Numbered from the stretch's first letter, positions 12,001 to 50,300 are shown. The stretch: DNA of 64,000 bases from Mizuhopecten yessoensis (GCF_002113885.1 NW_018404492.1:4125609-4189608), one strand, 5' to 3'. Made by a program: numbers and translations. Notes: generated from the sequence alone by a model not told the origin.

Positions 12001-12607
12001 CGCTCAAACTAGCCATTTTCTGTCTGACATTGTCTCCCTAGAGTACGGGAATGTGCTAAAGGAATGCTTGGTCAGACGCAGTCCATTCAGTAACAAATTA
12101 GTAAGCGATGATTCCGATGTAGTTCTAATTGGTTAACGGTCGTACAGCGTGACACGTGACTATAAGGAACCGATCCCTAAAAGTATAACCCGTTCTTGTT
12201 ACATGTGATCAATACCGCTACATGTAAAATGTCGAACCCAGCACGGCCATATACTGTAACACACCTATCGGGGTGAGATTATTAAACACTGGGATAAACG
12301 CTTATATTGCGTTCTACGTTAAATATATTCATATATCTTTACACATTTTTAAAGAAAGAATATAATTGAATCGGATGACATGGTACATTGTTACAACTGT
12401 CCAAATATGAACTCAGCATTGTTTTTGTAGTAAATATAAAATTGTGATATGATTGTGATTAATTACATCACGGGTATTCACTGATTCGTTAACACTTATC
12501 TGGTGTTTTACAGTTTGTGTTGAAACAGTACAAAGTTGCAGTAGAGAATGTTGTTTAAAAACCTACATGCAAGACTGATATTACTGCATTACGTAATTAA
12601 CCGTTAT

Positions 12608-18744: not shown

Positions 18745-20138
18745 TATTTAAGCATTGAACTGTTTTTGTATGATATTTATGATCTATTTGAATGACACAG
18801 CTTTGCAAGCAAACAACATAATGCGTCATAAGACATTTTGAATCTAATTGTCCTTAATTGTAAACTAAGACTGAACGATAGTGCGCAAACATTGAAACAC
18901 CTTCTTCTGTAGGGTCGTTCTTGCTTGCAAGAGACTATTTTGTTACAAATGCATCTGTTTGCAACATTTCTGTATATGTATGTGCTGAAATGTTTTAAAT
19001 GTTTTAAAAATAATAAAAACAGTTCAATACTTATATTTACGTTTTCTCTGCCTCTTATGTTCTTTTTTAACTTATAATTTATAATTAAAATTAAAAATGC
19101 CCGCCTTATCGACAGTCCACACAATTTCGTTCAATAGTTTGAACAGCGTATTGTCGCGTGCTGATTGGCAAACAAAGTAGTACTTTGACATTTTAACAAA
19201 CACTTCAAATTTATTCCACAATTTAGTATCAATACAATTGCGTATGATATGTCTATAGGGTGATTCCAGTTTTTCAATAGAAATCTGAGCTGAAAGTTAG
19301 ATTTGAAATTGTTTCGATTTTCCCCCGGAACAAATTTCGCGCATGGATAAATACAGTGAACACCGTGAATGGGACCTTGACCTCCACGAGGGAGTTATTT
19401 TTGGAAGTTAATTCGAACTTTTCTCTTTGCTCATTTTGTGAAGAATCCAGGCGTGAATGTATTTGTTGATTGTATGGGAACCCGACAACAGTCGGTAGAT
19501 TCTATAACAGCATCGTTATTTGACATGTCGTCTGAAACTGAGGAACCGTGGATCCGAGACGCGTGAAACTGATAGCGTTTGAAGTGAGTGATCTAGCGAC
19601 GGAGCACAGGTTCGTTACAAATGTCTGAAATGACGAATGTTTATGTGTGCTGTGACTTATCAGTAGGTCTGTAACATATGTGTCAGTAGGTCTATAGAAT
19701 ATGTGTATTTCAGACATTTATAACGAACCCCTGTTGATCAGTGCAGTGTAACAGACGATATTTCTGATAAATTGCATGAGCGTTAAAATTGTTTCCATTG
19801 CCGGCATTGGTGTTTTCAACCGATGTGCATTTTGTACGATATTGCAGACCTTGGTCTTGTTTTCGTTGTAATAAAAATGTTTTTTATTTTATTTTTTATT
19901 TTGCACATGAAGTTACAATGACATTATCAAATCTCACAATGCCCAGCGATATTTCAGCAGCCGTCATGTTTATTTACATTGGATATTGTAGTTCCGGTCA
20001 GTGTTGTAATAAATACGCTAAGAATTGTGTCTCGTGCGGCATGGTAATTATGTCTCGTGCGGCATGGTAATTAAAGTCCCATTAACGACACAGCTCTCAA
20101 AGAGGCTATATAGTGGCAATGCCATGCAAATGTAAATA
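18745..20138 (+). mobile_element. Non-autonomous interspersed element, copy 1 (~1.4 kb, unclassified)
   Basis: 19015-20138 is the reverse complement of 34179-35266 (about 93-97% identity in two 60-bp blocks checked, plus indels). Ends TATTTA...TAAATA in both copies; internal 23-bp inverted repeat at 19609-19631/19707-19729; no transposase ORF. Confidence 0.88.
20028..20073. repeat. 23-bp tandem duplication specific to element copy 1
   Basis: TGTCTCGTGCGGCATGGTAATTA x2; single copy at the homologous site in copy 2. Confidence 0.9.
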
Positions 20139-20751
20139 TTATAAAACAACTTATTATTTTAACCTCTATATGGAAACAGCTCGGAAACCTTGATTCTTCT
20201 AAAGTCGTGACATCGACCGTAGATGAGCGTCCGCTAATATACTATCTTACGGCAAAATCGGTACTTCGTGATCCAAGGGAAGTGCACGTACGAACATCTT
20301 CAGAAACCCAAGCACGACTTAGACGCTTTTAGTATACGCGTTTTTTTTATCAATGAAATTAAATAAAATGTATGTACATAAAATGTCACTTCTTCATCCC
20401 CTACGAGAACAGGCAGAAGGTCTGGCGGGAATGGCGTTTGCCTTGTAAGACAATATTGGTAATAGGGCAGAAAGGGTGTGTCGTGCTGGTGTCAGCAAAG
20501 TGGTCAGACATACAGACATAACGATGCAGTTATATAGGGGAGTAAGGTAGGTTTAGAAAAAAAATGCTATGGTAGTAGGAACATAATTCCAAATGAAAAG
20601 CAAATTTACAACTACAATGGTACTTTTTGTTTTCCCAATAATTGATCTGGTGAATGTTTATAATTCTAGAATCAACAACCTTTGCCGTCGACTCTTTTCT
20701 AGCGTTTTAACCTGTCTTTATTTGTAATTGAAAATGTTTAATAGCATACGA

Positions 20752-20823: not shown

Positions 20824-23703
20824 TTACAACAATATACCATATGATAGAATGTATCGTTTGCATGAGTGTGATCTGATAGTACAAAGGTAATGGTCATATA
20901 CATGTACTATAAATAGTGAATAGCGGGCATATAAGAGGAGTTTTTTAAATCTCCAGCTATCATTAATTATTATATTCATTTAGAAAGTTATTGTTAAAAT
21001 TGAAAAACAAATCTTTTCTTTACTAAATTACGAAGGAAATCAACTTGTTTCAAACTTTGCCGTTTCACCCCTTTTTTACCATCAAACATTTAAACATTTC
21101 AATTTGGTCTAGAAGGAGATATTTTCTACGCTCAATCGTTTACGCGCAATACAATATTAAAAAAGGGCAAAGTATGTTCGTGTGAGGAAAACGCAAGAAT
21201 AAGAGAAACGTTAACAACACGACCAGTCATCTAGAGCAAAACAATTAGCAACACCAGTAATTATAAAATAGTGTAACCACAAAGGTTCTGAACAAAATAA
21301 CGATTGCCAACTTTCATAAGCCAACTACAAATTATACTTGAAGCAACATATTCACTTTCACATAGTAGTATTGCGATTTCTTTCAACTCCCTCTCCCTTT
21401 ATCTCCACTTGCGGGCGTTGTATCAGTTATCGGGTGATCCTCAATCAGGATTTGCCATTTTCCCGAATGCTACACGCGACATAAACAATAAAACTTAAGC
21501 CGTCCTTAAGACCACTTAACGTTGTAATAAATGCATAGCTTCATTATTTCTTTGAACTAGGCTTATAAGTTGTTGTCGACAAGAGAAAGCTATTTCCTTT
21601 GATACGCTTCCTGCATTACATCTTTGTGCACAGACATAAGGACGGCGATAAATTTAGACTGCTTCTCGAATCCACTTGACCATTTCGTCTTCAGGAAACT
21701 TTACGTTGGTAACAACAAACACATCCAGATTTGAAGGCCTAACTATCAATGTTCCTATTTCCGATTATTCACGTTCTTGTTATGTAATCGTGGATTGGTA
21801 AAACGTTTTTTGTTGATAGTCGATCAATACTTTGATTTTTATTTTCTCGTTGACTTGTTTAAAGATTTATCGACATCCATATAAATACATGACGTTTTTA
21901 ATGGTTCGTAAATTTATCATTTAATTGCGACTTTGGAGGTTACAGTCGAAAAGAAAATGTACCAGCATTTTGTGGTTATGGTTATGTGTCGACGGTATAA
22001 AATAACATGCTGTCCGTCTGTCTTTCTGACATTTGATATTTGATGTAATGGTATTTGTCCGGAAATTTCCTATTAAACAACCTAACCACTCTGAATGAAA
22101 ATTTCAACTCATCAACCTTATCTTCTGTGTTTTTTCACATGCCTTTCACTCAATGTATTCTTACCTTTTAAGTGATTGATGCAAAATTCTTTGAAAAAAG
22201 GTAGAAAAAAGCAAGTCCCGACCATTACACTTAAACTACCCAATTAAGTACACAGATCAGTAACTCATGCATATGTGCAATCTAGATTGGTTTATGTTTA
22301 GTATGTTTTCCTTTAAAATCGGCATGGTTCTCTTTGAAAACAAATAGAAATAACTTGTTCAGTATCTCTTTGAGCAGTGCACCTGTTAATCGATTACCGT
22401 TTCCAATTCATCACAAAGATCTGTGCCTTGTTTGCGTTTAAACATACCACCTCCTCTAAACGAGATTGATTCCTATCTGGTTCAACATAAGCTAACAATT
22501 AAGTTCGTTGCGATCTTGTAGGAATACTAAACATCATTAATTATTATGAAGTTATAATTGTCTAACAAGTAAACTGTTCCTTTTTTTTTGTCCATGCAGG
22601 GCAGACATATACAGGTATATGGAAGAGCAGGAAGTTCTCAATAGTCTCTGCCTTACAGTTCATGATTAACCGTTCAACATTACTTAGTTATATACGTACA
22701 CGCATCGGTTTAACCCATGTCTGAAATGAGTTTGATTTGTACAACGGATGCGACTTTGTGACTAGTATAACTAGGCCTAGACTAATGCCATGTATCTCAA
22801 AGGGAATGAGCTTGCAAATAGACTGTATTTTTGTACACAAAATGTGTTAATTACAGATGTATGTAAGCTATAAAACGTCTATTTGTTTTCCCGGGCGCTG
22901 TCGCTGCCTGCTTGGTTAAATTAGATAACGAGATATACATGTTAGTGACTGTCATGCAGCCAGTAGTATACTTATTATCATACAAAATATGTGTCGGGTA
23001 ATTATGCAGGCGCACTGATACATGCTCTCTCAGTGATCGGCTTCACAACATCAGGCTGTTTTGTTGATGATATCAACATCTACTGTGGAGAACTAATTCG
23101 TAAATAAGCTTCATCCTCTCCGAAATCTTATTGTCTGTGCAGGTTAACTAATGCAGATTTTGCGCATTTCTAACAAACTTCTGTATCAAAGGACCGCAAT
23201 ACATCATGCAACATCAATATTCATTAGTGTAGCGTTTGTTCTAAACTGAAAGGATACGAGGTATTTATAGCACAATTAAGATAAAAAGTGAAACCAATTT
23301 ACCATGTAAGGGTTTTCTTCTCTAATAAACGATTGCTGTAACTTTAATGTGCAACGTCTACTTTACCAATGACTATATCTACTTTGAATACAAACAAATA
23401 AAGGGTCATGGTTCACGTTACAGATAACTACTGATGAATATCATGTTTCCGATTAAGTTCGTTCGTTGGAGATATAATAAAGTTGCACTAGATGTTTGGA
23501 ATATCAACTTTAAACATAAACAGGTTTATCACATTATGTACTGTGCTTTCCTGTGAATATACCCATGTCATATTATTTTGCGTATTAACCCATGTAATAT
23601 GACCTATCAGCCCTGTTATAAGTTTCAATTGTTTCAATTGTGATGTCACGCCTAGGACAAGTACATGACGTCACAGGCTTACGAACTTGGGTCAAAATGG
23701 CGG

Positions 23704-23892
23704 CTTTTCACGTTTCAAGGTTGCATGAAAATTGTCGTTTTACACGAATAAATGCCACAAATCTTGAGTATGTGATACATGTACTAAGGATCTTACAAAG
23801 GTCTTTTCACATTTCAATGTTGCATGAAATTGTCGTTTTACACGAATAAAAATCACAAATCTTGATTTTGTGATACATGTAATAAGGATCTT
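23704..23892. repeat. ~99-bp direct duplication (2 copies)
   Basis: CTTTTCAC(G/A)TTTCAA(G/T)GTTGCATGAAA...TAAGGATCTT at 23704-23794 and 23803-23892. Confidence 0.9.
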
Positions 23893-24764: not shown

Positions 24765-26184
24765 AAATGTTTGATTAGTATATATTTCACAGTCAGTATT
24801 AAGCTTTAAAGGATACATTATTCCTGGCATCATCGACTAAAATCGTTTTAAACTCATACAATACTGTGCGATGATAAACAGTGACCCTGACACTTATTAC
24901 AGGTATGATTTTACACTGCATGTAACAAACGTTATATTATCAGAAATTTACATGAAAACGACGTTCTGTCTCCTCAATATTCGTGACTATTAACATCCCG
25001 TAAAGGTCGGTAACGTATACGCCATATCGTCGGTATACCGATCATAACGATCTAACGAGATAAACCTTGATCTGACATGTAAATCATCGTCCCGAGATGA
25101 CAGCAGAGATGAGATTTGAGATAATAATTATCCGTGCTGTCAATGTCAGTAGTCTATACTAGTATGTGCACGACGCTCAGACACTATACATTATGTAGGT
25201 TCTCGGTTAATGCTGAAATACCGTTCCTCTCATACCGTACATATCCACATAACATATATATTCAGTAGAAAATAATGCAATTTGCATGCATTTTTCGGCT
25301 TTATGTCAATATGTTCTTTTAAATAATTCAACAAAAGAGTTGTAAGGAACTTGTATATTATCAATCTCAAAGCACCAAACAGCAAATGCTCCTGTAAATG
25401 CCAGCTTGGTACAAATTAAATATTGCGATCAACCTGCGTTATTCATACTCTTGCCAAAAAAAATCCCAATAATATGTATACAAATGAAATATGCTTATAA
25501 TTCCTTATTTATATTGATATCTGATGGGACAAGGGGCTGTGGATATTTTTAACCACGCGCTAATGGACACATGGGAAAAATTGAATCCAGTTATAAGTTT
25601 CTACCACAATCAAGCACTAGGCTTTTGTAAGCAATGGCATGGATATTTGATTAAGTTCAGACCATGTGTACCCACTATATGGTCAAACCGTTACAGAAAA
25701 AATCCATTAAAATGTGCAAAACCATCAAAGGGTATGCATAGCTGTTTAAACATGGTTCCATATCGGAAACTAACACCTATGTTGAATAACGAAACTGATA
25801 TTATTAACATATGCCAACGGCAAGAAAAACAGTAAATAAAATAGGTAGTGAATAATAGCGGCATGTTCAGAGCAAACTGCAATTAAAGCGTATAATTAAA
25901 CCTTAAATCTACGAGGTCAGTGTCGACATCCAATCCGAAGACATCAGTTTTATGTTTTAAAGTCATTCGAAGTCTATTATAGCGTTAATCGTACAAGCTT
26001 TACTTCCTGGTGTACCTAAAACAGAGGGTAAAAGGGATACATTTACAAGAGTGCAATATTTGATTCAGTGGTAGGTATACTTTAGTCATCCATGAATATA
26101 CAGTAGTATACATTTTCAACCTTCCTTTATTGCTTTCAATATACAATACGTTCACATCTGTATGTATATCCTCCAGGTTAATTA

Positions 26185-26358
26185 CAGTTATATCTCAACA
26201 TAATGCCCCCTCGTTTACTGCCACCATATTTCAATGTCCCTTTTTCTCGTTTTTTTTGCCAGAATTATTTTATACAATTTCTTCATTTTATCGCCAAACC
26301 TCTTGATAATGCCAAAATATCTCATGACACATAATGGCAGTATAATGAGGTTTGACTG
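26185..26358. mobile_element. Tc1/mariner (pogo/Tigger-like) MITE
   Basis: TA|CAGTTATATCTCAACATAATGCC ... GGCAGTATAATGAGGTTTGACTG|TA; 19/25 inverted match including the TA TSD; CAGT...ACTG termini. Confidence 0.7.
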
Positions 26359-27387
26359 TATTTTAATTTGTGCTTAAGTCATGTAAACTGTTCTAACCGT
26401 TGATATGTATGTATCAGGAGTGACACCATTGGGTACTGGCGAAGAGGAAATTTTCGCGTTAAAAAACAATTCAAATAACAAACCACAATGTGGAATTTGT
26501 CTTGTCGAGAATGGTTCCGATTACGATTCATCTTTGTAGTGTGTAACATTTTCACGCTTATTTATTAAACGCAAAGTCTGCGAGCCTTCCAAAACTGACA
26601 TAATGTCGTCTAAAGTAATTGCATTGATGAAATGTGATGCCTAAATGACTTTTCTATTAGTGTGATGATACATTTCTGCTTAGAATGCGTGTAGTTTTAT
26701 TTGTTTGTTTACAATCAAGGAGTATTACGAACAACAAAAAACTACATATATATTTTGAATGTCTGTATCAGACATGTTCCGATATGCATTCCTCACTTTA
26801 AAGAAAGGTAAATCCACATGGTGTTATACCAATGATTAAAACATGTACACTGTGGTCAAAGGTCAGCGCTCGCTATCAGACAGTCCATGTACTTTGGAAG
26901 CAGACAAGTGGATGTACGATTGTACATCACATTTATTCCATACTATCGATTTTTTTTGTTTTAAAATTCTGAACATTTCTGGTTTTGTCATTTCCATTAA
27001 CTTTGACGGTGGCAAACCTAAAAGGTAACAGCTGTTTGACTAGGAAGGAATTATTGCTGTTCTTTTGTATACATATCTTATTTATTGCAATGACAAATAT
27101 TTACAAGATAATTAACGAAATCAAATGAAGCTTCTCGCTCAAACGTGTCTTATTTCCAAAGAGGTTTGCATGGTAAAAATAGACATTTATTAAATAGTTT
27201 TCCTTTGGGCTCTCATTTTTATGCCACAGTTTATGACGCGTTTCTTTGAAAATGGACACTGTTCTCTGCGGCCCCGTGTTTACTGTTGTGGCTAAATATT
27301 ATTCTCCTTTCAACAGTACCAATAATACACTATGCCTCAAACAAAGAATCAGTTCTTGTTTACCAGCGGAAATGCCTTTTAACCACC

Positions 27388-31575: not shown

Positions 31576-32693
31576 AAACGTATTTCTGACATTAGTGCAC
31601 TTAATTACCTTACCTGATCATGCTGGGTTCGTTTATATAATTCCTTGGGTCTAACGTGTAAGTCGGCACGTTCATCATGTATTAAATAATCATAATCCTA
31701 TTCCATAGATATCATACCATAAATATGGCAATTACGTATGTTCTACTAAAGGAGTGAGGGTAAGGATTAAATGTTGAAACAGACGTTCCTAAATTTATCA
31801 AAACTAAATGAGAATGTAATACAGGATTATAAAAAGTGATCCGTCCCCACAGGTTATTGAGAAAGATGTACGTACATTTTCTGCCTGTCTGTTTTGTTCG
31901 GGATTATTCCAACTTAATACTGCGCATTGGCAGTAACGATGTTACATGTAACTTCATTTTTTTTGTGGTTGTAAAGAATGGTTTCGTTCCGAAGACTAGA
32001 ATACACGGCTCCTTTTTTGCTGGTTCCTGGTTAGGAATTGTCATTTAAATAGCCTGATTTCATGTTTACTGCATTCCTCGGCGCGTTTCTGGCAACAATT
32101 GGAACTGAATATTAGATTTCAAATTCTAAGTTCCTTAATTTTACTAATTTGTGTATGTCTGGCGAGTCGTTTCTGCAAGACTCCTGCTCTCACGACACCA
32201 CATGGGCTGTAGTAAGTTTAACTAATTGAGATTGTAGCTTACATTTTACGACTTGTACTGTAGCGTTTCTTTGCTATTCCTGCAGCTACGTACACTTATT
32301 TGTCCAGTTCAAATACAACATGGGGTAGCCTGCTTGAGACATTATCATCATATTTTTTTTTATTTTTTTTTTAACACACGTTGCGATCTGTTGGACGCTA
32401 TATCTGTCTGCGATATTTGAAGATTATTTTATTTATTTATCTTACAATTAGTTGGCGTTTCATTGATCCCCACCCCAGGATGCACATCTACAAAGCCTAC
32501 ATCCTTATAGTACATGAAGATTTACTTTTCTACAAATCGTTCGTGCACGTCACGCTACGATATCTTTTCGTACCAGACGATTCCTGGTGGGTAAACGACA
32601 AAATGGTGTGTTTCGGTCACGAAGGGGTCGTCTCAACGATGAAAGGTTTTAAATCATTGTGACTCTAGTGTGTCCCCCGCGGTACTTTTGACC

Positions 32694-32770: not shown

Positions 32771-34178
32771 GTTTCCATCACATGTCAACTCCGGTAGACA
32801 TAGGGGTCTCAAGTGGTGAACACGATTTGTAATGTTAATTGCATTTTCGTGCGGCGACCAAACCGTCTGTGATGATGTTCATTCTATCAAGCGACGATTG
32901 TTATTGTTTGGTTCAGAAAAGAACAGCAGTCAATATTTTCTCTACTTTTTCTGGTTCAGATGCCAATTTGATGATTTCTCCAAAAAAAACAATCGAAATG
33001 TCTAAGGTATTAAAGCATACTTTATTCATACATGTTACTGCTCTCCTGCACAAGCATTAATTCTGTGCTCAATCTTACTTCCGTGTAACTCTCTTACTTG
33101 TAAACTTTGAAAACGATATTCGACTTTCTTTCTCTCCTTGTTTGTTTTCAAATAATTGAAAAATGTGAACTTTTTATAATTCATCAACGGAACAAGACAT
33201 TGGAAACAAAATTTGAGCATTATAGCGATATGGTGAACAGGGGCCCTGTCCTCGTGCCATCGTTTCACATTTGTTTTCCATACGACTTGCGATGTTTACT
33301 GCTCCATTCCTTAACATATAATATAGAACGATAATCATCCACTGTAGAAAGCAGCGCAAAGTATTGTACACTAAGAAATTGATTGGAAGCCATATATCAT
33401 GTAACGTTATGATTGCTTTGGTTTGGTTTAGTCACATGCTTCATTACCAAAGTGTTAATTTAGGACTTTAGTGCCTCATTTTGTCTGTCATTCATCTCGC
33501 ATATCTCGGTATAACTTATTTATACAAATATGCAAAATATAAATGTTTTAGAACATTTTAATTATTAACAGAAAGAAATCACTCAAATCTTTTTAAATAT
33601 TTGACTTTGTGTGCAGTACATTCAGAGGTCTAGATCATTTTCAGAAAATTGTATTCTACCAAATTTCCCTGGAGAGTGGGGTTTGCGAAATCTTATCAAA
33701 GATTACTATCATGCGTATATGAAAACGACTTTTAGATCTTCTCACACGGGAGTGTTAAAGTTAAATTAAACCTATGGTTAAGACCACATATATTTCTACC
33801 AAAAGTTTATCGCCATCTTCGGTCTGAAAAGAAATAAATCGAAAAATAAACTTCATATAAAATGTATTGACATGATTTTTTCAGAAGTCCTTCTGAATGA
33901 AGTCCGGATCTACAATACCAACATATGTATGTCATAAAATCAGATATTAAATGAAGGATTTAAATGTTTCAAACACGTATAACCGCGATTAAACAAACAA
34001 GGCTACTCAGAATAAGTTGAGCTGTAATTGTATGATCATTTCGTTGCAATTTATTTGTCGAAGCATACTTACCTTGAAGCTTAGTTAGGAGTAAGAGTAA
34101 CCGTATAGGATCTAAGTCATGTATAAGTCGCGTCTGTGTTTGATTGGTATTCCTCGATATTGTGGACATTCATATATA

Positions 34179-35341
34179 TATTTACATTTGCATGGCATTG
34201 TCACTTTGTAGCCTCTTTGAAAGCTGTGTCGTTGATGGGACTTTAATTAACATGCATCATGAGACACAATTCTTAGCGTATTAAAACAACACTGACCGGA
34301 ACTACAATATCCAATATAGATAAACATGACGGCTGTTGAAATATCGCTGGGCATTGTGACATTTGACAATGCCATTGTAAATTTATGTTTAAAACAAAAT
34401 AAATAACACTTTTATTACAACGAAAACAAGACCAATGTCTGCAATATCGTACAAAATGCACATCGGTTGAAATCACCAATGCCGGCAATGGAAACAATTT
34501 TGACGCTCATGCAATCCTTACATGTATCAGAAATAGCGTCTGTTACACTGCACTGATCAACAGGGGTTCGTTACAAATGTCTGAAATACACATATTATAT
34601 AGACCTACTGACACATATGTTACAGACCTACTGATATGAGTCACATCACACATAAACATTTCAGACGAACCTGTGCTCCGTCGCAAGATCACTCACTTCA
34701 AACGCTATCTTTCACGCGTCTTGCATCCCCCATTCCTCAGTTTCTGACGACATATCGAATAACGAGAATGTTATAGAATCTACCGACTGTTGTCAGGTAA
34801 CCATACAATCAACGTAATGCATTCACGCCTGGATTCTTCATAAAATGAGCAAAGAGAAAAGTTCGAATTACCTTCCAAGAAAAACCTCCCTCGTGGAGGG
34901 CAAGGTCGGATTTACGGTGTTCACTGTATTTGTCCATGCGCGAAATTTGTTCCGGGGGAAAATCGAAACAATTTCAAATATAATTTTCAGCTCAGAGTTC
35001 TATTGATAAACTTAAAATCACCCTATCGACATATCATACGCAATTGTATTGATACTGAATTGTGGAATAAAATTGAAGTGTTTGTTAAAATTTTAAAGTA
35101 CTACTTTGTTTGACAATCAGCACGCGACAATACGCTGTCCAAACTATTGAACGAAATTGTGTGGACTGTCGATAAGGCGATAAATTTTAATTCTAAATAT
35201 AAATTAATATTTAAAAAAGAACATAAGAGGCAGAGAAAACGTAAATATAATTATTGAACTGTTTTTGTATGGTATTTATGATCTATTTGAATGACACAGC
35301 TTTGCAAGCAAACAACATAATGCGCGCTCAATGCTTAAATA
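34179..35341 (-). mobile_element. Non-autonomous interspersed element, copy 2 (~1.16 kb), inverted relative to copy 1
   Basis: Reverse complement of copy 1 body; same TATTTA...TAAATA ends; abuts a (TA)n run at 34173-34180. Confidence 0.88.
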
Positions 35342-38300
35342 TGAACATCAAAGTTTGGAAGAAGATGCCAACCTTAGGTTCTCTTGTGTTACCAATGTAA
35401 CAACTCGTTTTATAACCGAATACATGTACAATATACTAAAATTAGTATGAGTTGGACAATTATACTTTTCGTCTTCAACAACTCAACCTATAAGTTCACG
35501 TTTCGATTGGATTCAACGTTGTAATAAAAGGGGTATATGAATAAGCACTTGTCTTTACTAGGATTGAAATTCAATCATTTAAGAATCACTAACAATAAAT
35601 CTAACATAAACCTTCTAGCATTTTGAAGTGCTAATTATCGTCACCTCATTCTTGATACGTGTACGCCTATAATTCCATCACCAAAGTTGTTTGGTAGGGT
35701 GGGTGTCATTGAAACAAAGGCTTTTCAATGTTTAATATGAATCCGTAATTTTAAAATGTATACGGTATGCCATTTGTGGTGTCTAATATATTATTTTAGT
35801 ATGCTATATCTTCACTTCTTTCCCATAAATGCCTGACTACTAGGAATGCACAGAACTGTGTCAATGCCACTATTGGAGACGATACATCCTTTGTGTAATT
35901 TTTCCTCACTCTTCACTACTTTCCAACACATTTACAGCACCTCATCAGGTTTAACGAGAATCGTGTATTGAAGAAGAAGCAGGACGTGGCGTGTGAAAAG
36001 CTTGTTGATCATGCATCTGCTTTCATAGTAATATGCATGATATCAGATGTTTTCGCTAATATTCCTGTCCAAATGCACTCAAATAATGAAGTTAATATCC
36101 TCTCCAAAATCGATATTAAAACGGAATCGATAGATCAGACATTCAATAGGATTTTTAATTTTATTTGTTATATTTTTCTTCACCCATGAATCACTGATGC
36201 CAGTTTATAAAAAAAATGTTAACGATTTTAATTAAAACCTTCATTATACCACACACAATTCTTATCATGTGGTCAACCGGAGGTTTTAATTCTCCGTTAA
36301 ACGTCATTATATAACACAAACTGGTTGTGTACGCAGTATAATCGATGTTTTAATAAGAATATTTTATTTTTCATAAGCTAGCATAATGGTAAAAGTTGAT
36401 TGAGCTTCTTAGATTTTTGATATTGGAATCACACTTGTAATAAATTGAAGAAAGAACAGTCGATGAGCCATGGGGTACCAAATGTTCAAAGACCTCTTTT
36501 CAAATAGTGCATTTTCAATCATTCCTGTTTGCAGATCACACAGATTTATATTTTGGTACCTATTGATTTCCCGTCATGTACAAGTCAAATGAAACGTGGA
36601 TACATGCATTATATGTTAATTAGACACTACTTCAATTGCAACAGAAGGGGGAACGTGTGTTTCCGTATCATTAACCTTAGACTGCAATGGAGATCACAAT
36701 TAAAATATATATTTATATTCAATACAGCCAGTTGTAGTCAGGTCTCTAGGGGTTAGCCGTAACCAGGATGAACCGGTTTACATATCATGTGACCGGATGT
36801 GAAGGTACTATCGATATCAGTTAGTGCCGCCTACTACCTTGTAAAGGATGGCATAAAACAGACGGTGGTAATTCCACATCCATGTCGGTCGGTATCTGAG
36901 ACCTTTCAGTTTATGTTTTCATTGATTTGACATTTTCGACCATACTGATCTGTCTAGAAGTATCTGCTTTCAGCAACGTTGCCATCAAATGTACATTCCA
37001 TCTGTAACTGTCCGAGATGTCTTGCTCTAACCTAATTTGGTCAACCTAACTCAGACCACGTGCTCGGGATTCAATTGTAAGTTTATCTACACCTGTTCAT
37101 AAACTGGGATATAGAGGATCGATACAATGTATGACATGATGAGGGGTATCTATGTAAGCATCCCTAATGTCCTTTGACACAATTAGTGTAAAGGTAATTT
37201 TAGATGTTACGTCATCTGAGGTCATGTGCCTTTTATGTTTAGACAAAAACATGATTTTCTGAACATGTTGTCAATACAATTAAGTTCGTTAATCAGCCAT
37301 CTCTCGATCACGACAATATGGACGTTTGCTGTGTAGCTTTAACTTTTTCTCCGGCAGAACTCAACAAGACGATTAGATTAGACTTCCGTCCCTATCAAAT
37401 CAATGTCCTGACACTGATCGATTACGTCGGGTTATATAACACAGTAATTGGTTATGGTATAAATCGTCCCGGTCTACAGCTGTCGAGGACAAATTGCCTT
37501 TACTGACCGTCAGCTTCAAGTAGTTGCTGGAATTGGTCATCTCTCGGTTCTCAGTCAGTTATAGTTTGGCAAATGTCATGAACAAACACAGCGCTAATAA
37601 AGTAAAGAAATTGTACACAACATCAGATAGATATTCCCCTATCTGTGTTATATGAGTGATAAGTCGGGAGTGACCGATACTCAAGACCTTCCCGTTGTTT
37701 CGACGCACATCGAAAACCAATTCTAGTATTAATTCTTTCCTGTATCCTGACTCCGATGCCGTCTATTATTTGGCAGTTGTGTTGGTTTCACTGGTGTTCT
37801 AACGAAACTGTTGATGAACAATTTCCGTCAATTTGATTGGTTAAAACTTGAGTTTGTTGGTGCATTGTACGTTACAGAGGCGGTGTCGGTGCATTGTTAC
37901 TTGACATTGAAAGTCATACAAAGATGAGGAAGAAGTTACTACACCTAGATCTCGTTAGTCAGTTTTTATATTGAAGAAACGCTAAACACGTTTTCGTTAC
38001 AATTCATTTTTTTATTTTTTATTTACAAGTTACATGTAATTAATTCGAGATTGATAACCTTGATACACAGAAGTCACTTCTTTTGGAACGGCCAGACAAC
38101 ACACGAAAATGTAAATGTTTTGGCCATTATCAAGAACCAGGTGTTGTTACTGTGTGATTATTTATCTAGCTTTTATCTTTCAAGAACATTAGCATGGTTC
38201 ATTGAATGCACACTTTACACATTATTAAAATAGAATTAACCAGTTCTTCTCTTACATTTGAAATCCATATTAGAAGAGGTTTTAAGCCTCTCTCTTTCTG

Positions 38301-40711
38301 TTTTAGAAGTACTTTAGATCAGTTTAGATGTTCACCTTTGTGGTTCTAACATCACCGATGATGCCTTGAATGACGAAACAGCTATATGGTTCAGCGGAAT
38401 TCGTTTTGGCTTGCTGTATGTACTACCAGCTTTCAAGGGTGCATGTTTGTATCTTATGTCCATCCTTAGTGATATCACAAAGAGACAGCTTCGATAAGTT
38501 GTTGCGATGTCTGTCCGGATGCATACAACCTGAGACGTCAGGGTCTAACCTGGTCAAGATAGGTCTCTTTAGACTAAGTGTCATCGAAGAAACAATCCGA
38601 ATGTATCATCAATTTCAATGACACTGTCATTACAAACACTAGTTATACCGCAACCTGTTACTGCCTCCTCCAATTGTGTGGAATTTGTAAAAGCCCATCC
38701 CATTTTTACAGAAAATTTGAATGCTTTAAGTGACAGGATTTTTTAAGCTGGTTTTTGTTTATACCTGAACACTTCCTTAAACACTGTGGCGAGATGACAG
38801 GTCTTTGATGATATTGATAGGCGTCACGCTATGTGCTTCTTTATCAATCGCACACAAAAACGATGGATCTTTGAAAAGTATGATGTAGACGAAAAACCCT
38901 TAAAAATGTTGTATTTTAGCATGAAAGTTTTAGCCAAAGGTAGGTAAAGAATATGAATGTAAAGGCAGAAATATGACATGGTCTTGAGTAATACTGTACA
39001 TCCAAATGTAACACTGAGTACCTATAAAATCAATACTTCGATCATTCCTCGAGGATATTAGGAAGTCATGTTGTACCCGTTTTGAAAAGCGCCTCAAAAT
39101 GTCTGTTCCTATTTGAGTCTTTTTTATACGTTTACTCTTTCGTCTTGAGCAAGCAACTGATGACACGATTGAGTCTAAGAGTTATTGATTGCAGCAACAG
39201 AAAGGACAACAATACCATTATTTTGACATGGTGTTAAAAGCGTACCAAATATGGCCTCTGCTAGGAAGTCGGCTTAAACGCATCGAGTGGCAACACAACG
39301 CCGCTCCAACCTAAGTGCTAGTGAGCAGGTGTAAATGAATAATGGAAAAGCGATTAAGATTCTCATAATGTTATTAAAGGTGCTACCACGTAATACCTGT
39401 CATGAGAATGTGATGGATAGAGTCCCTTGGTACATACATACACTGTATAGAATGTTAATGGCAGTGAAATACGTAGAAACAAATATCATGTACTTTCACC
39501 ATAATCTTAATTGAAATTCTTACTTTGTCATATTCCAAACAGCCAATGTTTTCCAAATGGCATGAAAAAAATGCTTTGATAGCATATGTTCGCAACTCAA
39601 ACAAAAATGTTCCTCTTTCTTCCTCGTGCTAGATTATGCGATGTCCCCCATCTGTCTAACACCTTTACGTGGCATTTGCCGCTAATTTTTAAACGGTGGT
39701 GTATTCATCCGCTCGCTAAAAAACGGACAACCTGCATTTGCAATGTTATATTTTGTCGTTTAAGTGCTGCTGTGGTGTTATGTAATTCAAAAGATTGATA
39801 TATAAACATAATTTACACCGTGGAACATTTTTTTGTTCTCTAGATATCACAGAATGGAAAAATACATTGCAATGATACAGTATATCTGTATTACATTTTG
39901 TATAAACCGAAAAAATCCCACACGCGATTTAATGTCAAAACAAGCATATCATTTCCATTATAGAAACCAATGCTTTTTTTGTCGATGTTGTAACAAAAAT
40001 GTAACAATAAATCGGGAAAACTCCTATCACTCGGCAGTTTTCCGCAACGTATTAAAAGTGTTTTCGCCTACGATTTATGTATCCTCATACATACACGGTG
40101 TGATATTGGCAACGTTACACCAGTAATGGACACGTACAGAATGACAAGTGTATTAGAAAGCTTTGTCAGAAATCAATACAGTAGACACAGCATGTGATCA
40201 ATTCATGATAAAAAAAACCCACATTTCACACTTTTCAAAAACTATATGTAAAATAAACGAAAAAATTGCAAGAACTAACTTGTACATGTAATACATGAAA
40301 GAGCACGAATCAAATGTGTGTTTGAGAACATGTTATATGTCATAATTTAGTAATTCATCGATTGTGTTAAACATCGACTATTTACCCAGTTAGAGGACGC
40401 ATGAATAGTATTGGAAGCTGAATACGATTCTACCGAATAATATCACTTCCCAAGGCCAGATAATGACACAACACAATTATTTAATTAATTAACTTTGAGA
40501 CTGGCTGTTTTCAGATTAGCTAATTAGATTGAAATGTTCCCTGCCTCCTTGAAACATGCAGGAGACTACCAATCCTACAAAAAACGGGGCTAGTGTTTAA
40601 ATGTTGATACTGATGACTTTAAGCTTTAACTTAAGCTTGAAGTTTAATCACACAATAGCAGATATGGAAGTAGGACCGGGAAACATTGAGTGCGTGAAGT
40701 CGACATTATTA

Positions 40712-40771: not shown

Positions 40772-41766
40772 GAATTTGTCAGCCTGACAATCATTATAAC
40801 ATTTTTCCAGGAAAACTATAAGTCAGTTTGTGAGTTTGAGTTTTACTTGACTGCTACCAAAATAGCCCCTATGCCTACCGGACATCTTTTGAATACTTGT
40901 CGGCAATATTTCGGACAAAACACAACCATCTTTACAATTAGCAGCCAAGCGGCCCCCTCATTGTATGTTTCGTTGAATTTGCTGTTGTTTTAGATTGCTT
41001 GTAAGCAATTGCATCCTGTGAATGATTTGCAAACCTTGAACTGTGTGTGTCGGACGCCATCTGTGTTGTTATGAAGAGAGATTCTAGTTTGAGTCATCTC
41101 CTCTCGCACGTGCTTTTATAGACCCCGGCTCTATAGACCCCGGCAAGATATCCAATCAGAAAGAATGTTTCAAATTAGAAGGGTGACACAATATTGTATT
41201 TTCCTGTCATCTTACCAGTTACACCCAATTAGACACGCTGTTATTAAGTTGTGGTACAATAATACATTGCTGTGTTAGTTGTAAAAACTGTCAACAAAGA
41301 CAGTACAGTAGAAAACAACATCATTATAGGTTTATATTTGGCATTTATATACCCCGGAACAACATTTTGACATTTAATGTATTTTCCTTGCTTTATAATT
41401 ATAATGTTTATTACACAATACAGTGTATCATACAATCACTATATGCATGTATCATAAAATCAAACATTTACGAGAAAAACATCACTTCAAGCATTGCAAT
41501 ACTAATATATCATTACGATATACATTTATACAATTTATGTACAATACAAATAACATCAATGTATAATAGTGACATTTAAATACATTACCATTATACGTTA
41601 CAACATAGCCCCGTGGTAAATATGTATTATTAACGTGTGAATATTGTACATCTATACAATATCACTGAAGAAATAATACCAGTTTGTAAATGTTATTACT
41701 GCGATGCACTAATATCGATATTATCACATACAGAACATGTAAATTATTACCATTGACTTATCGCAT

Positions 41767-44600: not shown

Positions 44601-46348
44601 AGTCATTGTGGACATATCGAGAAAATCCTTCAGTGATAACATAGGAAATGGCAAACTAGAATTACCAATTATTCAGTGGTGTGGTTTGTTAAACTAAAGG
44701 TGTGTAAAGCTATATCACAATTATCAGGCATCAGATCAGAGTTGATTTGCACATATGAGTGATGTGAAAGACTCAAACTCAGCCGAGATGTCAACGCATT
44801 ATGGCCTTTTGGAAACATATCGAAACATTAACCATTGTACATGTTTATACTTATACACGCTAGAGGTTGCAGCCAAAACATTAGTCTACAACTTACATGT
44901 ACCAAATTCAAAGTTTAAATGCACAAGTGTCATTCATACACACAACAAGAAACTCAGATGACCCATACATACGTTCATGATAATACAGATGAGTACACCG
45001 TCATAACGAACTTAACTGTATTCGAATAAAGACATATATGTGGTGCACCAATGAAATCATGAATTTTACAAATAAAACATTTCATAGGATAATGATGTGA
45101 TGCAATGGCTTCAATGTGGTTCGCGAGCAGCATCAACCCGCCTGAGACGCTCTCTCTTTCACTGTTCTACCGAAGTAGTACCAACAGTTTACTTATGTAA
45201 CGTAGTAAACATTTGCACTCGTGCGGGATTTATGCTTATGTATACATAAATATCGTAGGCGTTTCTGAAACTTCATATATAGAATCTATAACCGAACCGT
45301 ACATAGAGTTAAAGTCAAGACATTTCAGATATACGATCCTGTATGGTTGTAAGATATTTGTCAAGGGAACAACAGTTCGCTGTTAATGCCTTAAAGAAAT
45401 TATGTATAAAATCATTCCTCAGTTTAATGCGTTAATCCCATGTGTAACACGTGACAGATATATACTATACATAGCATGTACACAGCCTCCGTAATATAGA
45501 TATACACAGCTTATAAAAGGAAGAACAAATAAAAAAGATACATAACCGTGGTTTAGTACCCCGAATGTAAATATCTCTAAAGTACTTCTGGTCTGATGAG
45601 GTCGAAATGTGATAAGGATGAAATGGTTTATCACACTCTCACTTTTTTCCTTTCTAGAGCTTCTCATATTATTATTATATGTTTTTAACTTATTTATTTA
45701 TTATAATTTATTCAACTTATTTATATTTTCTCAAGTTTAAGTGTTTGTTTTACGCCTCTTTGGTTTCGTTTGTCTTTTTGTGTCGAAATTAATTTCCTAT
45801 TCAGTCATTGTGCAATTTTAAATTACTATATGGTGTAGGAGACAATTCATCATTTGACTTTGAAAACCATGGGTAATATATGTTATTAAAGAGAGGAAAT
45901 TGAAAGAATGAAAATAACAAATATATTATATTTTCAAAGGTCATATCAATGCAAGACGTATCTCTGGAATGTCAAGTCATGCACTATGATCGGGATGAAT
46001 TAATAAGTACCTGTATCTACATAGATTCGACGAGCAAAAGACATGATGTAGCCCATTTAATGCTATAAAAAGACGCGACGTGTTCAGGGATATGATTTTG
46101 TGTTAAGTAGGACAGCCTATGATGTTAACGTTTCAGTGACAAATCAGACCTGAAAAGAACAACTGAAGTTGTAGGTTTCACGGAAAACAATGGGAATACT
46201 ACATTGAGGGTTGGCTTCGTTAGGCTGTCTATAGTTTCATTTTCATGGTCTGTACATCATGCTTTTGTTTTTGCTGTTAGCCTCATTAAGTATGCAAATC
46301 TTACATAGCATTTCGACAAAGTTGACAACATATCCGCTTCAGGAAGCC

Positions 46349-47332: not shown

Positions 47333-50300
47333 TAATTCTCAAATGCTCAAATGATTTTTTTTTCTCTCAAATATACATGTAGTCTCGTAATCAGAGATTG
47401 ATTGAAGTGTGCACATTACCTATCTGAGAGTCCCTTGCACGTTAGCAAAACAATACACCTTTTGTATCCGACTGCATGTTTTTGTAAGAGGCGAATTATT
47501 TCGGCACCATCATTTTGACATGTTCAAGATTCTAACAGTTGTCTTGAACGTTTATATAATTGCAGTTTTCGGAAGACTTTTATGTATTTTTTGCATCAAT
47601 ACCTACATTTGTCTTGTTTATTAATATACTGCATTATGTCCCATCGACAACTAAAGGCGTGTACTTAAAAAAAATGTAAACAGATACGTTTGCAGAAAAA
47701 TACATCTCCTTAAGATTTAAAAGTCAAAAGGGTGAAAGTTGCAAACACATCAACAGCTAACGAATCGGTTGACACTTTATGTTATACAATGTATCTTATA
47801 GCAAAGATGAACTGTTTGGAAACATATAAACCTTGATATCAGAGACATGCAAACAGTACCGAACATTGTTGTCATTGTTGACACATCATAACATTTGCCG
47901 TGCGTTGAATTCTCTGTGGTCAATAAGTGTTACAATGTAAAAAGCCTATCGCATGCGCTTTCTTTCGTAAAATGCAGGCTTGTTTTATTTATTTACACCA
48001 TTTGTATATGTTATACGCGCACGAGTATTTCCATTCAACACAGCATTTTATAAATATATCAACATCTGTTGATAGTTCAAGTGAAGATAATGTTTTTAAT
48101 ATTGGCAACAGGTTTGGTTTACTGCTGATCGTGTTGGCTTTAGGTACTAAATTGGAGCTATTACCAACATAATCTTTAAATCACATGTTTATGTACCAAA
48201 ATTCGAAATCTACAATCACTGTTATTTTTTATATATTTGTATATATGTTCTTTTTCTGATCACTTAAACATTCTTAATTTTTGTTCGAACTCTACAGAAA
48301 GCCCTTGATCGTGGTTTCGCCTACTGTTTATATCATGTACTCTGTGCAACTACCGCTGGGGTACGATATATATATAAACATAATTGGATATTATCAGTAG
48401 CAACCTGCTTTTATCGGGACTTTTGCAAATCTCGTTATCCGTAATCTTCCCTGTTACCGCTGTCTTTTTAGCGTCCTAAACCAACATCAATACATGTTCT
48501 CACTAACTTTGTCAGTGGCATTTCTCTTATTACCTATACATATCGAGGGATTGGCACTGATAATCTAGTTCCAAGTGGCCAACTACTAGACATAACATAA
48601 TTGGGGAATGGACTGCCAATAATAGTTTAAGTTTGGAAATATGGAACCCTAACGACTATACTGACAAGCTAACATGTATACCGCGCCTAAAATAACGCAT
48701 ACAGTATTTGAGATATTAGTTTGTTAACGGCACTGTTGACGATTTGCTGACCTAAAATTAAACAACAAATCTTTTGATAGTCTTCAAATGATAAACAGTT
48801 ACACATGCTGTATATACACTGTGTGTGATAAAGGTAAGCTCCCACTCCACTCGAAACATGCCAACCTTTCAACACAGTAAGCATATGCTACGTAGTTTCT
48901 TTGACATTTAAGGGAAATATAGTCTAATGACTGGATTCCAACCACGGCCTTATCTCCTTGTACATGTAACCATTACTAGTAAAACGACTTTGTTATTGAA
49001 ACATAAACAAACATATAAATAACATTTTAAAAAAATGAAACCTTTAGGATCCTATCAACCATTTGTAAATAGCTGCGTACTTTCATATTACGTAAGTGGA
49101 TGTAGCGCCATCATGACGCTATAAACGAGAATGGTTTAGAATTATAGCAGAGTTGCAATGCAAATAAGTAAAATAAATAAGTGTCAACCCTGAATTACCC
49201 TGGAAGAAAAAATCATCACATCAATATCAAATTTCCAAAAACGACTTATACGTTAATATTGGGAATTGGCAAAGATATGATAGGTGTGTATCCTGACCTA
49301 TGGCACCAGTTTTCAACATTTTGCACTGATACGGAAAACTTTTTAACCTATATTACTGTACATCAGCATGCATCACGTTGACGTATATTGAACTCCTCCT
49401 TTATTAAAGTAAGATTATAATACTGATACCACTTGTGAACATTACAAACAATAAACCATGTTACATTGTACTTTCATAACATATTTAACAAACATTTACC
49501 GAGCACATGAATGTCATGTATTATAAATGGGTCGTTTTAATAACTAGCCCGCTTTACACGTGATGTGTGTATGGACGGCTTGACGAATGTTCAAATTTAT
49601 CTTAACGCTCCGATATGTTATGCAATGTTTTGCACTTTGCCACCGTTCATTTGTGTTTTGTCCTTTAAAATGTTACTTAGTTTAAACAGTATTTTATTTA
49701 ATAAATCAATACAATTCTAGCAAACATTCTATTTCAAAGGCATGTGAAAACAAGCTTAAATCTTACGTAAATCTCTTTTCAAATTGCGTCTGATGTTCAG
49801 AATACTATAGAAAGAACAGCTAATAATCAAGCAAACGCTTAAAAAGGGAAATCACTATTTCAATCATTTACTGTGTGGCGGCAATAGTCTATGGCTTCAA
49901 GCTTCTGTCGGAAACATCTGAAGACAAGTTCACCGCCAGTCCATGCATATCAATACAGACATGATGTACAATTGTCCAAGCCATGGTCACAGAGTAACAA
50001 CTGTCGCGTAAAACCCCAGCAACTCAATCTTCAATCGGTCTCCTCCTCGGCGGTTATTTAATAGTAATTCTTGGAAATGTATATTGGTTGTATACTGATC
50101 TAAGTTTAATTGTGTCCAGCTAATGTTGCGAGACTCGTGTTGGCAAAGAGGACGGAATGGGGCGACATGTTGTCCATGTTTCAAGGAGGAACGCATTACG
50201 TCACATGTCTTGCGTGAGAGAGGAACATGTAGACAGTAATGTAAATAATAAATTTATTTTTATTTTTGTTAAGATAACGACTCGTTAATTTTCTTGACCT

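What the first reader, a model, noticed from the sequence alone, without database searches (positions are those of the whole stretch)
34519..34526. Paralog comparison suggests TACATGTA arises as a Tc1/mariner excision footprint
Seen: copy 1 (reverse complement of ~19760-19780) reads GCAATT-TA-TCAGAAAT, while copy 2 reads GCAATCCT-TA-CATG-TA-TCAGAAAT, so CATGTA is present at this TA in one copy only. Established: Tc1-type elements end CA...TG, duplicate TA and leave TA-CA-TG-TA footprints on excision. Seen: TACATGTA occurs at least 20 times in the window (e.g. 3793, 4285, 8350, 11780, 12219, 14704, 20899, 35421, 40283, 48961, and doubled as TACATGTACATGTA at 7637), against about 2 expected from base composition. 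A CAGT...ACTG MITE sits at 26185. Inference: the excess of this octamer is a fossil record of massive mariner cut-and-paste turnover rather than a transcription-factor site.
Basis: partly seen in the sequence, partly recalled or inferred. Interest (0 to 1): 0.75.

Follow-up and report, generated by a model that had tools for sequence, protein, structure and literature searches.

The report
Transposon excision scars (TACATGTA) in scallop DNA
The eight-letter word TACATGTA is several times too common in this animal genome (probably a scallop) because a few letters (CATG plus a repeated TA) have again and again been added at TA sites, most likely as repair scars left when Tc1-type cut-and-paste jumping genes cut themselves out.

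Summary
TACATGTA occurs 23 times in the window against 3.2 expected. It occurs 60 times in 232 kb from 60 contigs against 10-16.5 expected. It occurs 199,406 times in the 988-Mb genome, against 94,922 for the same word read backwards. So the real excess is 2-5 fold genome-wide, not 10 fold.

The site at 34519 lies in a 1.15-kb repeat. About 640 copies have the short form (TA) and only 10 have a long form. The long copies I could fetch form one clade, so the extra letters are a derived insertion. The insertion is untidy: 7-8 letters in nine copies and 6 letters in one.

Independent cases point the same way:
- One clean TA to TACATGTA insertion sits in a minisatellite unit.
- An unbiased listing of all longer variants in about 1,100 copies of an old repeat gave about ten CATG-type insertions that adjacent sequence does not template. 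The five in the TA-poor stretch lie at or beside its only TA.

Other support:
- The word has sharp edges.
- Its flanks look like any TA site.
- TACA-N-TGTA words decline in excess as the spacing grows from 0 to 3.

Tc1-like transposase genes are abundant. No occupied site was found, so the donor elements remain inferred. The scan found the same thing earlier on neighbouring DNA of this genome.

The parts
34519..34526 (.). The TACATGTA of the finding. It is part of a derived 8-letter insertion (CC + CATGTA) at a TA of a 1.15-kb interspersed repeat.
34177..35327 (+). Copy 2 of the 1.15-kb interspersed repeat. It has no terminal inverted repeats and a long palindrome near its 3' end; its class is not settled. 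It belongs to an older sub-lineage, 4.8% from the family consensus.
18994..20148 (-). Copy 1 of the same repeat, with the short (empty-site) form.
19768..19769 (.). The unoccupied TA in copy 1 that corresponds to the insertion point in copy 2.
7637..7650 (.). Doubled form TACATGTACATGTA (two scars sharing a TA). It is identical in four other individuals.
3793..3800 (.). TACATGTA in unique sequence; identical in four other individuals.
4285..4292 (.). TACATGTA in unique sequence; identical in four other individuals.
8350..8357 (.). TACATGTA in unique sequence; identical in four other individuals.
11780..11787 (.). TACATGTA in unique sequence.
12219..12226 (.). TACATGTA in unique sequence.
14704..14711 (.). 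TACATGTA in unique sequence.
20899..20906 (.). TACATGTA site.
23776..23783 (.). TACATGTA inside a 98-base tandem duplication. Both copies carry it, so it predates the duplication.
23874..23881 (.). Second copy of the same duplicated TACATGTA.
31943..31950 (.). TACATGTA site.
35421..35428 (.). TACATGTA site just beyond the end of repeat copy 2.
38031..38038 (.). TACATGTA site.
40283..40290 (.). TACATGTA site.
44894..44901 (.). TACATGTA site.
47374..47381 (.). TACATGTA site.
48961..48968 (.). TACATGTA site.
57327..57334 (.). TACATGTA site.
58203..58210 (.). TACATGTA inside a short TA run. Removing CATGTA restores an unbroken (TA)n.
60926..60933 (.). TACATGTA site.
61143..61150 (.). TACATGTA site.
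26183..26360 (+). Old short element flanked by TA, with CAGT...ACTG ends and imperfect inverted ends. Its family has at least 646 candidate copies. It is an example of the kind of element whose departure would leave TA-CA/TG-TA.

Best explanation
TACATGTA is over-represented because short, untemplated insertions of the form CA(0-3 letters)TG plus a second TA have arisen many times at TA dinucleotides. The best mechanism has four steps. A Tc1/mariner-type element (autonomous or a short non-autonomous relative) inserts at a TA and duplicates it. The transposase later excises it with staggered cuts that leave the element's terminal letters (CA on one side, TG on the other) on the flanking DNA. 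End joining then seals TA-CA to TG-TA. The scar drifts to fixation and decays by point mutation. At 34519 such an event (6 letters plus two extra C, or a complex 8-letter repair product) happened once in an early copy of a 1.15-kb repeat, and that repeat's own amplification then carried it to at least 10 loci. Shown here: the excess; that the long form is derived; the TA-site specificity and TA duplication; the variety of junction forms; and the presence of Tc1-like transposase genes and of a TA-flanked CAGT...ACTG element family. Inferred: that transposon excision rather than another process produced the insertions; the 2-base stagger; and the number of scars, roughly 1.0-1.3 x 10^5 perfect ones.
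For: (1) Excess. 23 against 3.2 in the window. 20 against 3.6 in 79.5 kb from 29 other contigs. 48 against 7.9-13.7 in 182 kb after masking repeats. 199,406 against 94,922 for the reversed word genome-wide. (2) Specificity. TACATGTA ranks first of 136 TA-NNNN-TA words in the repeat-masked pool. Of 16 palindromes TA-xy-yx-TA only xy=CA is enriched, apart from the TA microsatellite. One-mismatch variants have O/E about 1. Flanks match generic TA sites. (3) Junction diversity. TACA-N(0,1,2,3)-TGTA has O/E 3.5, 2.3, 1.7 and 1.4; no other TAxy half shows such a decline. TACAWTGTA occurs 85,459 times against 37,686 for the reversed control. (4) Polarity at the focal site. 642 copies match the anchored pattern, nearly all listed ones short. 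Ten long forms are seen. The long copies form one clade with 94/85 support. (5) A clean case. One of 11 units of a 33-base minisatellite has GGTA[CATGTA]TGCC, and another unit has TAATGTA. (6) Unbiased spectra. Among all 37+37 length variants of two anchored intervals in 581 and 514 copies of an old repeat, about 10 carry untemplated CATG-type insertions: TACATGTA, TTCATGTA twice, TACATGTG, TACGTGTA, TACAATGTA, TACACTGTA and others. In the TA-poor interval the five such insertions lie at or beside the only TA. Most other variants are homopolymer or TA-run growth or tandem duplications. (7) Doubles sharing a TA number 1,733, about 30 times chance. (8) The DDE_3 (Tc1-like) transposase family gave 835 candidates; all 150 scored passed the cut-off and many have open frames of 290-400 aa. 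(9) The sites are real DNA: five of them are identical in contigs of four other individuals from other studies. (10) Established knowledge: Tc1/mariner elements insert at TA, leave 2- or 3-base 3' overhangs, and leave overhang-plus-TSD footprints (PMC3878927, PMC7827188).
Against: No occupied allele or paralog (TA-element-TA) was found at any scar site, so no scar is tied to a named element. The focal example is not the canonical 6 letters: nine of ten copies have 7-8. In the old repeat, imperfect forms outnumber the perfect octamer by about 9 to 1, yet genome-wide the one-mismatch words show little excess under an order-3 model. The two observations fit only loosely. The canonical 3-base-stagger scar TACWGTA is only weakly enriched (1.4-1.8x), and the 4-letter scars are not visibly enriched. 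The reversed control word is itself above Markov expectation (24 against 11-18), so part of the excess reflects a general richness in TACA/TGTA words. Another palindromic octamer, TGACGTCA, is equally enriched in unique DNA, so enrichment alone does not prove a scar.
Confidence: 0.72

Rival explanations
1. A transposon-independent mutational process creates the insertions. Examples would be error-prone repair of breaks that arise preferentially at TA, or slippage that seeds and extends a TACATG hexamer repeat.
For: The insertions are shown but their source is not. Doubles are about 6 times commoner than uniform re-targeting predicts, and the reversed-phase 14-mer occurs 642 times, so some hexamer-repeat growth exists. 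Junctions are variable.
Against: CA and TG are not templated by the flanks in the clean cases. The TA is duplicated as in a target-site duplication. The added letters match the near-universal CA...TG ends of Tc1-type elements, as in the local element at 26185. A single TACATGTA has only 2 letters of repeat to slip on.
Confidence: 0.12
2. TACATGTA is a functional palindromic binding site (or structural signal) kept by selection, and the insertions seen are incidental.
For: It is a perfect palindrome, as dimer binding sites are. A bona fide binding-site-like octamer (TGACGTCA) is equally enriched in this genome. Five sites are invariant among four individuals. Under an order-3 model, one-mismatch variants show no excess.
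Against: There are 200,000 sites, spread evenly through non-coding unique DNA of a window with almost no open reading frames. Flanks carry no information. Variable half-site spacing of 0-3 shows a graded decline. The word arises by insertion with TA duplication. Decayed and variant forms occur in repeats. Overall polymorphism in those individuals is only about 0.1-0.2% per individual, so invariance says little.
Confidence: 0.07
3. The excess is mainly a composition effect: a genome rich in TACA/TGTA/ACAT/ATGT words and related microsatellites, with no special process.
For: Higher-order Markov models absorb much of the excess: 23 against 13.4 at order 5 and 17.8 at order 6 in the window. The reversed word is also above expectation. 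The genome-wide ratio to the reversed word is only 2.1.
Against: Higher-order models are built from sub-words that the octamer itself inflates. The octamer still stands 3.5x over order 3 after repeat masking and is the top word of its class. Composition cannot explain derived insertions at TA or 1,733 doubles.
Confidence: 0.09

Closest known systems
Tc1/Tc3 excision footprints of Caenorhabditis elegans (2-base staggered cut; van Luenen, Colloms and Plasterk 1994, and Plasterk 1991, as cited in PMC3878927)
   Same: TA target duplicated. The two terminal letters of each element end (CA and TG) are left between the two TA, which predicts TACATGTA. Variable junctions come from end joining.
   Different: Here the scars are read from a genome as fossils. 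No donor element or transposase is tied to any scar. The stagger length is inferred, not measured. The scale (about 10^5 sites, enough to shift the frequency of an octamer) is not reported in the papers I could search.
Sleeping Beauty / Frog Prince canonical footprint TAC(A/T)GTA (3-base stagger; PMC3878927 table 1, PMC7827188)
   Same: Same family of elements and the same logic: overhang letters plus the duplicated TA.
   Different: That 7-letter form is only weakly enriched here (1.4-1.8x). The dominant form has 4 letters between the TAs.
P-element-type excision scars reported by this scan in the same genome (s1-515148, s1-512441 and others)
   Same: Repair scars of cut-and-paste elements kept in large numbers in this genome.
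   Different: Those are 24-37-base palindromes inside 7-base target duplications. I did not test them.
Palindromic transcription-factor sites such as the cAMP response element TGACGTCA
   Same: A perfect 8-letter palindrome, strongly over-represented in unique DNA.
   Different: TGACGTCA shows flank preferences: ATGACGTC and GACGTCAC are enriched too. TACATGTA has none, and it is seen to arise by insertion at TA.

Membership tests
Tc1/mariner excision footprint | Lies at a TA target, with TA present on both sides of the extra letters (retained target-site duplication). | tested here: met
   34519...TA-CATG-TA... against a single TA in about 640 paralogs. L042 unit GGTA[CATGTA]TGCC against GGTATGCC in the other units. 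In the TA-poor interval the five CATG-type insertions lie at or beside the only TA.
Tc1/mariner excision footprint | The scar is the derived state and the bare TA is ancestral. | tested here: met
   Ten long against about 640 short copies. The long copies form one clade with 94/85 support, nested in a star-like tree that also holds old short-form copies. The root is not independently fixed. One of 11 minisatellite units is long.
Tc1/mariner excision footprint | [quoted passage not shown] | tested here: inconclusive
   CA...TG matches the ends of the TA-flanked element family at 26185 and the usual Tc1-type ends (own knowledge). The element that left any given scar is unknown.
Tc1/mariner excision footprint | An occupied allele or paralog (TA-element-TA) exists at the same site. 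| tested here: not met
   No family copy has ...[not A]TG-TA-TCAGAAAT... at the right junction (0 matches). The left-junction search gave only near-chance matches. Five window sites are monomorphic in four individuals. The sample is small, so this weakens the case but does not exclude membership.
Tc1/mariner excision footprint | Canonical size (6 added letters for a 2-base stagger). | tested here: inconclusive
   Clean +6 in L042. One family copy is +6 (TAACATGTA) and the other nine are +7 or +8. In the old repeat several are +6 and several are irregular.
Tc1/mariner excision footprint | Tc1/mariner transposases and mobilisable elements are present in the genome. | tested here: met
   PF13358 (DDE_3): 835 candidates, all 150 scored over the cut-off, many uninterrupted frames of 290-400 aa. 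The element family at 26185 has at least 646 candidates.
Tc1/mariner excision footprint | Staggered cleavage 2 bases inside the element ends. | not testable with these tools
   This needs mapping of the cut ends in an excision reaction. CAT-ended elements with a 3-base stagger would give the same octamer through 2-base pairing.
Transcription-factor binding motif under selection | Graded tolerance of variants and informative flanks; conservation beyond neutral; not generated by insertion. | tested here: not met
   One-mismatch words have O/E about 1. Flanks equal the generic TA context. The word arises by insertion. Variant and decayed forms occur in repeats. Conservation between species was not testable.

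The most novel reading that the evidence does not exclude
Excision scars of Tc1-type elements are the main recurrent class of untemplated small insertions in this bivalve genome. They number about 10^5 perfect copies plus at least as many variant forms. They form a readable fossil series (perfect, spaced, doubled, decayed) from which germ-line excision rates, cut geometry and end-joining habits could be measured without any experiment.
Probability: 0.5. Interest if true: 0.65.

Novelty: new member of a known kind. Interest (0 to 1): 0.55.

Why it matters
Excision footprints are known from genetic assays on single loci. A genome in which they are frequent enough to change the count of an octamer, and to dominate the untemplated small insertions seen in repeat families, would give a direct measure of how often DNA transposons leave as well as arrive. 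That quantity is usually invisible in genome surveys that count only resident copies. It also warns motif hunters: a strongly enriched palindrome in a bivalve genome need not be a regulatory site. I found no paper in the searchable library that reports this, though that library lacks most subscription journals.

Tried and rejected
I did not work around this. Later genome work used only counts and short pattern matches of at most 58 letters, which are the tool's normal output.

(2) Allele test. Contigs of four other individuals laid on window 3000-8999 show all five TACATGTA sites unchanged and no 6-letter indel. With about 0.1-0.2% differences per individual, this says nothing about origin.

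(3) All-against-all of the 274 kb I held gave few informative paralogs. Two differences are substitutions of unknown direction: the L014 array (TACATGTA against TATATGTA) and the near-identical loci L047/L049 (TACATGTA against TACATATA).

(4) Test for decayed scars by conditional left-context frequencies gave an excess of 13 +/- 14 against 29 expected at equilibrium. The power is too low and the baseline too uneven. I did not pursue it genome-wide.

(5) A naive scan for TA-flanked inverted ends was swamped by internal positions of long inverted repeats. Its one Tc1-like candidate (41421-41880, CAGTG ends) is single-copy in the genome, so I do not count it as an element.

(6) Search for a copy of the focal repeat with an element still at the TA: none found.

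(7) The L042 minisatellite is not a dispersed family; only one match exists genome-wide.

(8) The enrichment of TACAGGTA and TACAGTTA in the unmasked pool came from tandem arrays and one repeat family, not from scars. It fell sharply after masking: TACAGGTA stayed mildly above expectation and TACAGTTA dropped out of the top words.

(9) Literature. No report of TACATGTA as a genome-wide scar. Plasterk 1991 is not held.

(10) Assembly artefact rejected: independent runs carry the same sites.

Full report
**Observation**

The window holds TACATGTA 23 times. 100 dinucleotide-preserving shuffles give 3.17 on average and never more than 8. The sites sit in unrelated, mostly unique contexts. The first 15.4 kb of the window, with eight sites, has no other copy in the genome apart from one old 100-base repeat.

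Copy 2 reads GCAATCCTTACATGTATCAG and copy 1 reads GCAATTTATCAG. They differ by 8 letters, not 6.

The size of the excess depends on the null model. In the window it is 7x against dinucleotides, 3.5x against order 3, and 1.7x and 1.3x against orders 5 and 6. The higher-order models are built from sub-words that the octamer itself inflates.

**Extent**

The genome has 987.6 Mb in 82,659 contigs. Earlier notes of this scan call it a Yesso scallop, and the figures agree with my memory of that assembly. I did not test the identification.

- In 79.5 kb of flanks from 29 other contigs there are 20 sites against 3.6 expected.
- In 232 kb from 60 contigs there are 60 against 10 (order 1) or 16.5 (order 3).
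- After masking everything with a paralog in the sample there are 48 against 7.9 or 13.7 in 182 kb.
- The whole genome has 199,406 sites, and the same word read backwards (ATGTACAT) has 94,922.

So the excess is real and genome-wide, about 2-fold over the reversed word and 3-5-fold over Markov models. That is roughly 1.0-1.3 x 10^5 sites. The window is richer than average.

**What the enriched unit is**

- TACATGTA is the top word of 136 of the form TA-NNNN-TA in the repeat-masked pool, and third of all octamers there.
- Of the 16 palindromes TA-xy-yx-TA only xy = CA stands out, apart from the TA microsatellite.
- The shorter words ACATGT and TACATG have no excess left once the octamer is removed.
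- One-mismatch variants have observed/expected near 1.
- The eight positions on either side look like the surroundings of any TA. Only G just outside is slightly raised, 0.30 against 0.20.
- Words TACA-N-TGTA with 0, 1, 2 or 3 letters between the halves are enriched 3.5, 2.3, 1.7 and 1.4 fold. No other TAxy half shows such a decline.
- Genome-wide, TACAWTGTA occurs 85,459 times against 37,686 for its reversed form.
- The doubled form occurs 1,733 times. That is about 30 times what chance extension of a single site gives, and about 6 times what uniform re-use of the two TA would give.

Sharp edges at the two TA, uninformative flanks and a graded series of spacings are what junction variety in a repair scar predicts. 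They are not what a dimer binding site predicts.

**The focal site**

34519 lies in a 1.15-kb interspersed repeat at window 34177-35327. A second copy lies inverted at 18994-20148. The repeat has no terminal inverted repeats and a long palindrome near its 3' end. I leave its class open.

A pattern anchored on both sides finds 642 copies genome-wide. Of the 100 listed, all but the window's own copy have the short form, most of them exactly GCAAT-TT-ATCAG. A second pattern that admits only longer spacings finds 11 copies:
- three with CCTTACATGTA;
- four with CCTACATGTA;
- two with CTTACATGTA;
- one with TAACATGTA, which is exactly +6 and one substitution away from the clean product;
- one unrelated TT duplication.

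The four long copies among the 30 I could fetch form one clade (support 94/85). It sits in an otherwise star-like tree that also holds equally old short-form copies. Main-lineage copies are 0.3-2.4% from the consensus and the long-form copies 3.3-4.8%.

The most economical reading is one insertion in an early source copy, spread afterwards by the repeat's own amplification. The root of the tree is not fixed by an outgroup, and the left junction is untidy. So this example alone would be weak.

**Independent insertions**

(a) In locus L042 a 33-base minisatellite has 11.5 units. All read GGGGTAARGTATRCC except one, which reads GGTA[CATGTA]TGCC. That is a clean 6-letter insertion with the TA on both sides. 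One unit 172 bases away reads TAATGTA. The array is unique in the genome.

(b) As a test that assumes nothing about the inserted letters, I used two pairs of conserved anchors in an old repeat. It is tRNA-related, partly arrayed in 55-base units, and present at window 1023-1138. I listed every copy whose anchor spacing is longer than normal.

- Interval 1 (normal 19-22 letters, three to four TA) has 581 copies, 37 of them long.
- Interval 2 (normal 12-13 letters, one TA at its right edge) has 514 copies, 37 of them long.

Most long variants are homopolymer or TA-run growth or tandem duplications of neighbouring letters. About ten insertions are not templated by neighbours:
- TACATGTA;
- TTCATGTA, twice;
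- TACATGTG;
- GCATGTA;
- TACGTGTA;
- TACAATGTA;
- TACACTGTA;
- a longer one ending CACATGTA;
- CATGCA.

In interval 2 all five lie at or beside the single TA and none in the TA-free interior. There is one ambiguous exception.

Counting by eye from the listed strings, this is about 0.3-1% of TA sites in this old family. The genome-wide figure for the perfect octamer is about 0.15-0.2% of TA.

**Possible source elements**

A six-frame search with Pfam DDE_3 (the Tc1-like catalytic domain) gives 835 candidates. All 150 that were scored pass the curated cut-off, and many lie in uninterrupted frames of 290-400 residues. The loci could not be cut out, so I have not seen their ends.

It belongs to an old family with at least 646 candidates at about 79% identity.

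**Reads**

Contigs of four other individuals from two further studies cover window 3000-8999. They differ from it at 4-11 single letters each, and only one of them (X14) shows indels, four in all. All five TACATGTA sites there are unchanged. This shows that the sites are real DNA and fixed or common. It says nothing about origin.

**Mechanism**

Established knowledge:
- Tc1/mariner elements insert at TA and duplicate it.
- Excision leaves 2- or 3-base 3' overhangs made of the element's terminal letters.
- End joining leaves the overhang letters between the two TA (PMC3878927; PMC7827188 for the 3-base case and the TAC(A/T)GTA scar).

A 2-base stagger on CA...TG ends predicts TACATGTA. Extra or lost letters at the join predict the spaced and irregular forms.

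Shown here:
- the excess;
- TA specificity and TA duplication;
- that the long form is derived;
- junction variety;
- presence of the enzyme family.

Inferred:
- that excision made the insertions;
- the stagger length (CAT-ended elements with a 3-base stagger would give the same octamer);
- neutrality.

**Rivals**

- A repair or slippage process without transposons (0.12) explains the insertions. It does not explain why the added letters are CA and TG with a duplicated TA.
- A selected binding site (0.07) is suggested by the palindrome and by the equal enrichment of TGACGTCA. It fits poorly with insertion origin, empty flanks and variable spacing.
- Pure composition (0.09) explains part of the raw figure. 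It does not explain the insertions or the doubles.

**Weak points**

- No occupied site was found.
- TACWGTA is only 1.4-1.8x.
- In the old repeat, imperfect forms outnumber the perfect one by about 9 to 1. Genome-wide, one-mismatch words show little excess under an order-3 model (257 against 248), although they do under order 1 (257 against 188).

**Comparison and novelty**

The mechanism is the known Tc1/Tc3-type footprint. What is new is its scale in a natural genome. I found no paper that reports it, in a library that lacks most subscription journals.

This scan had already reached the same reading on the neighbouring window (s1-507913). Several first-reader notes describe the same thing on other pieces (s1-554183, s1-507957 and others). 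Those are not independent support. Everything above was tested here on my own data.

**Limits**

I did not try to obtain more sequence by other routes. The classification of the variants was done by eye from the printed matches.

Noticed in passing
pool of window plus loci L002-L060 (e.g. contexts printed): The palindrome TGACGTCA (cAMP-response-element-like) occurs 27 times in 182 kb of repeat-masked sequence against 2.5-4.6 expected. The contexts are unrelated, the flanks are preferred (ATGACGTC, GACGTCAC), and a second copy often lies nearby. It could be a real regulatory word, or the trace of old palindromic elements.
   Followed up: partly
window 17680-19009: A 1.33-kb unit bounded by 178-base arms that are 99% complementary. 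It abuts the end of repeat copy 1. An earlier first-reader note (s1-514908) describes the same place as a flipped element terminus.
   Followed up: no
window 27388-27577: A 190-base palindromic short element (73-base arms, 93% complementary). Copies at about 93% identity lie in L017 and L058, which suggests thousands of copies genome-wide.
   Followed up: partly
window 15500-15853: A 36-base minisatellite of about 10 units (unit GGACACTCGGACGATGTACGACCGGACGATAAAAAA). The only open frame over 130 aa in the whole window (15422-15871) is an artefact of this array.
   Followed up: no
window 7652-7663: Right beside the doubled scar, one individual lacks 8 letters (from 7656) and another differs at 7652 and 7658. 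That is three of the 26 variants seen in 6 kb, within 12 bases. It may be chance.
   Followed up: no
window 1023-1138; loci L031-L060 around position 1500: An old repeat (65-80% identity) with a tRNA-like part and a conserved core that also occurs as tandem 55-base units in many places. It contains a TA-CAGTTA...TAACTG-TA segment of 37 bases.
   Followed up: partly
L047 (a 1.7-kb contig) and L049: Two loci 99.7-99.9% identical, probably the two alleles of one place kept as separate contigs. They differ at one TACATGTA by a single letter (TACATATA).
   Followed up: partly
window 34177-35327 and 18994-20148: The 1.15-kb repeat that carries the focal site has over 2,000 first-look candidates and very young main-lineage copies (0.3-2.4% from consensus). 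It has no inverted ends and a roughly 35-base-stem palindrome about 55 bases from its 3' end. It may be Helitron- or Helentron-like, but it is unclassified.
   Followed up: partly
window 41421-41880: A TA-flanked segment with 12 of 14 matching inverted ends beginning CAGTG, like Tc1. It is single-copy in the genome, so it is either chance or a very old lone element.
   Followed up: yes
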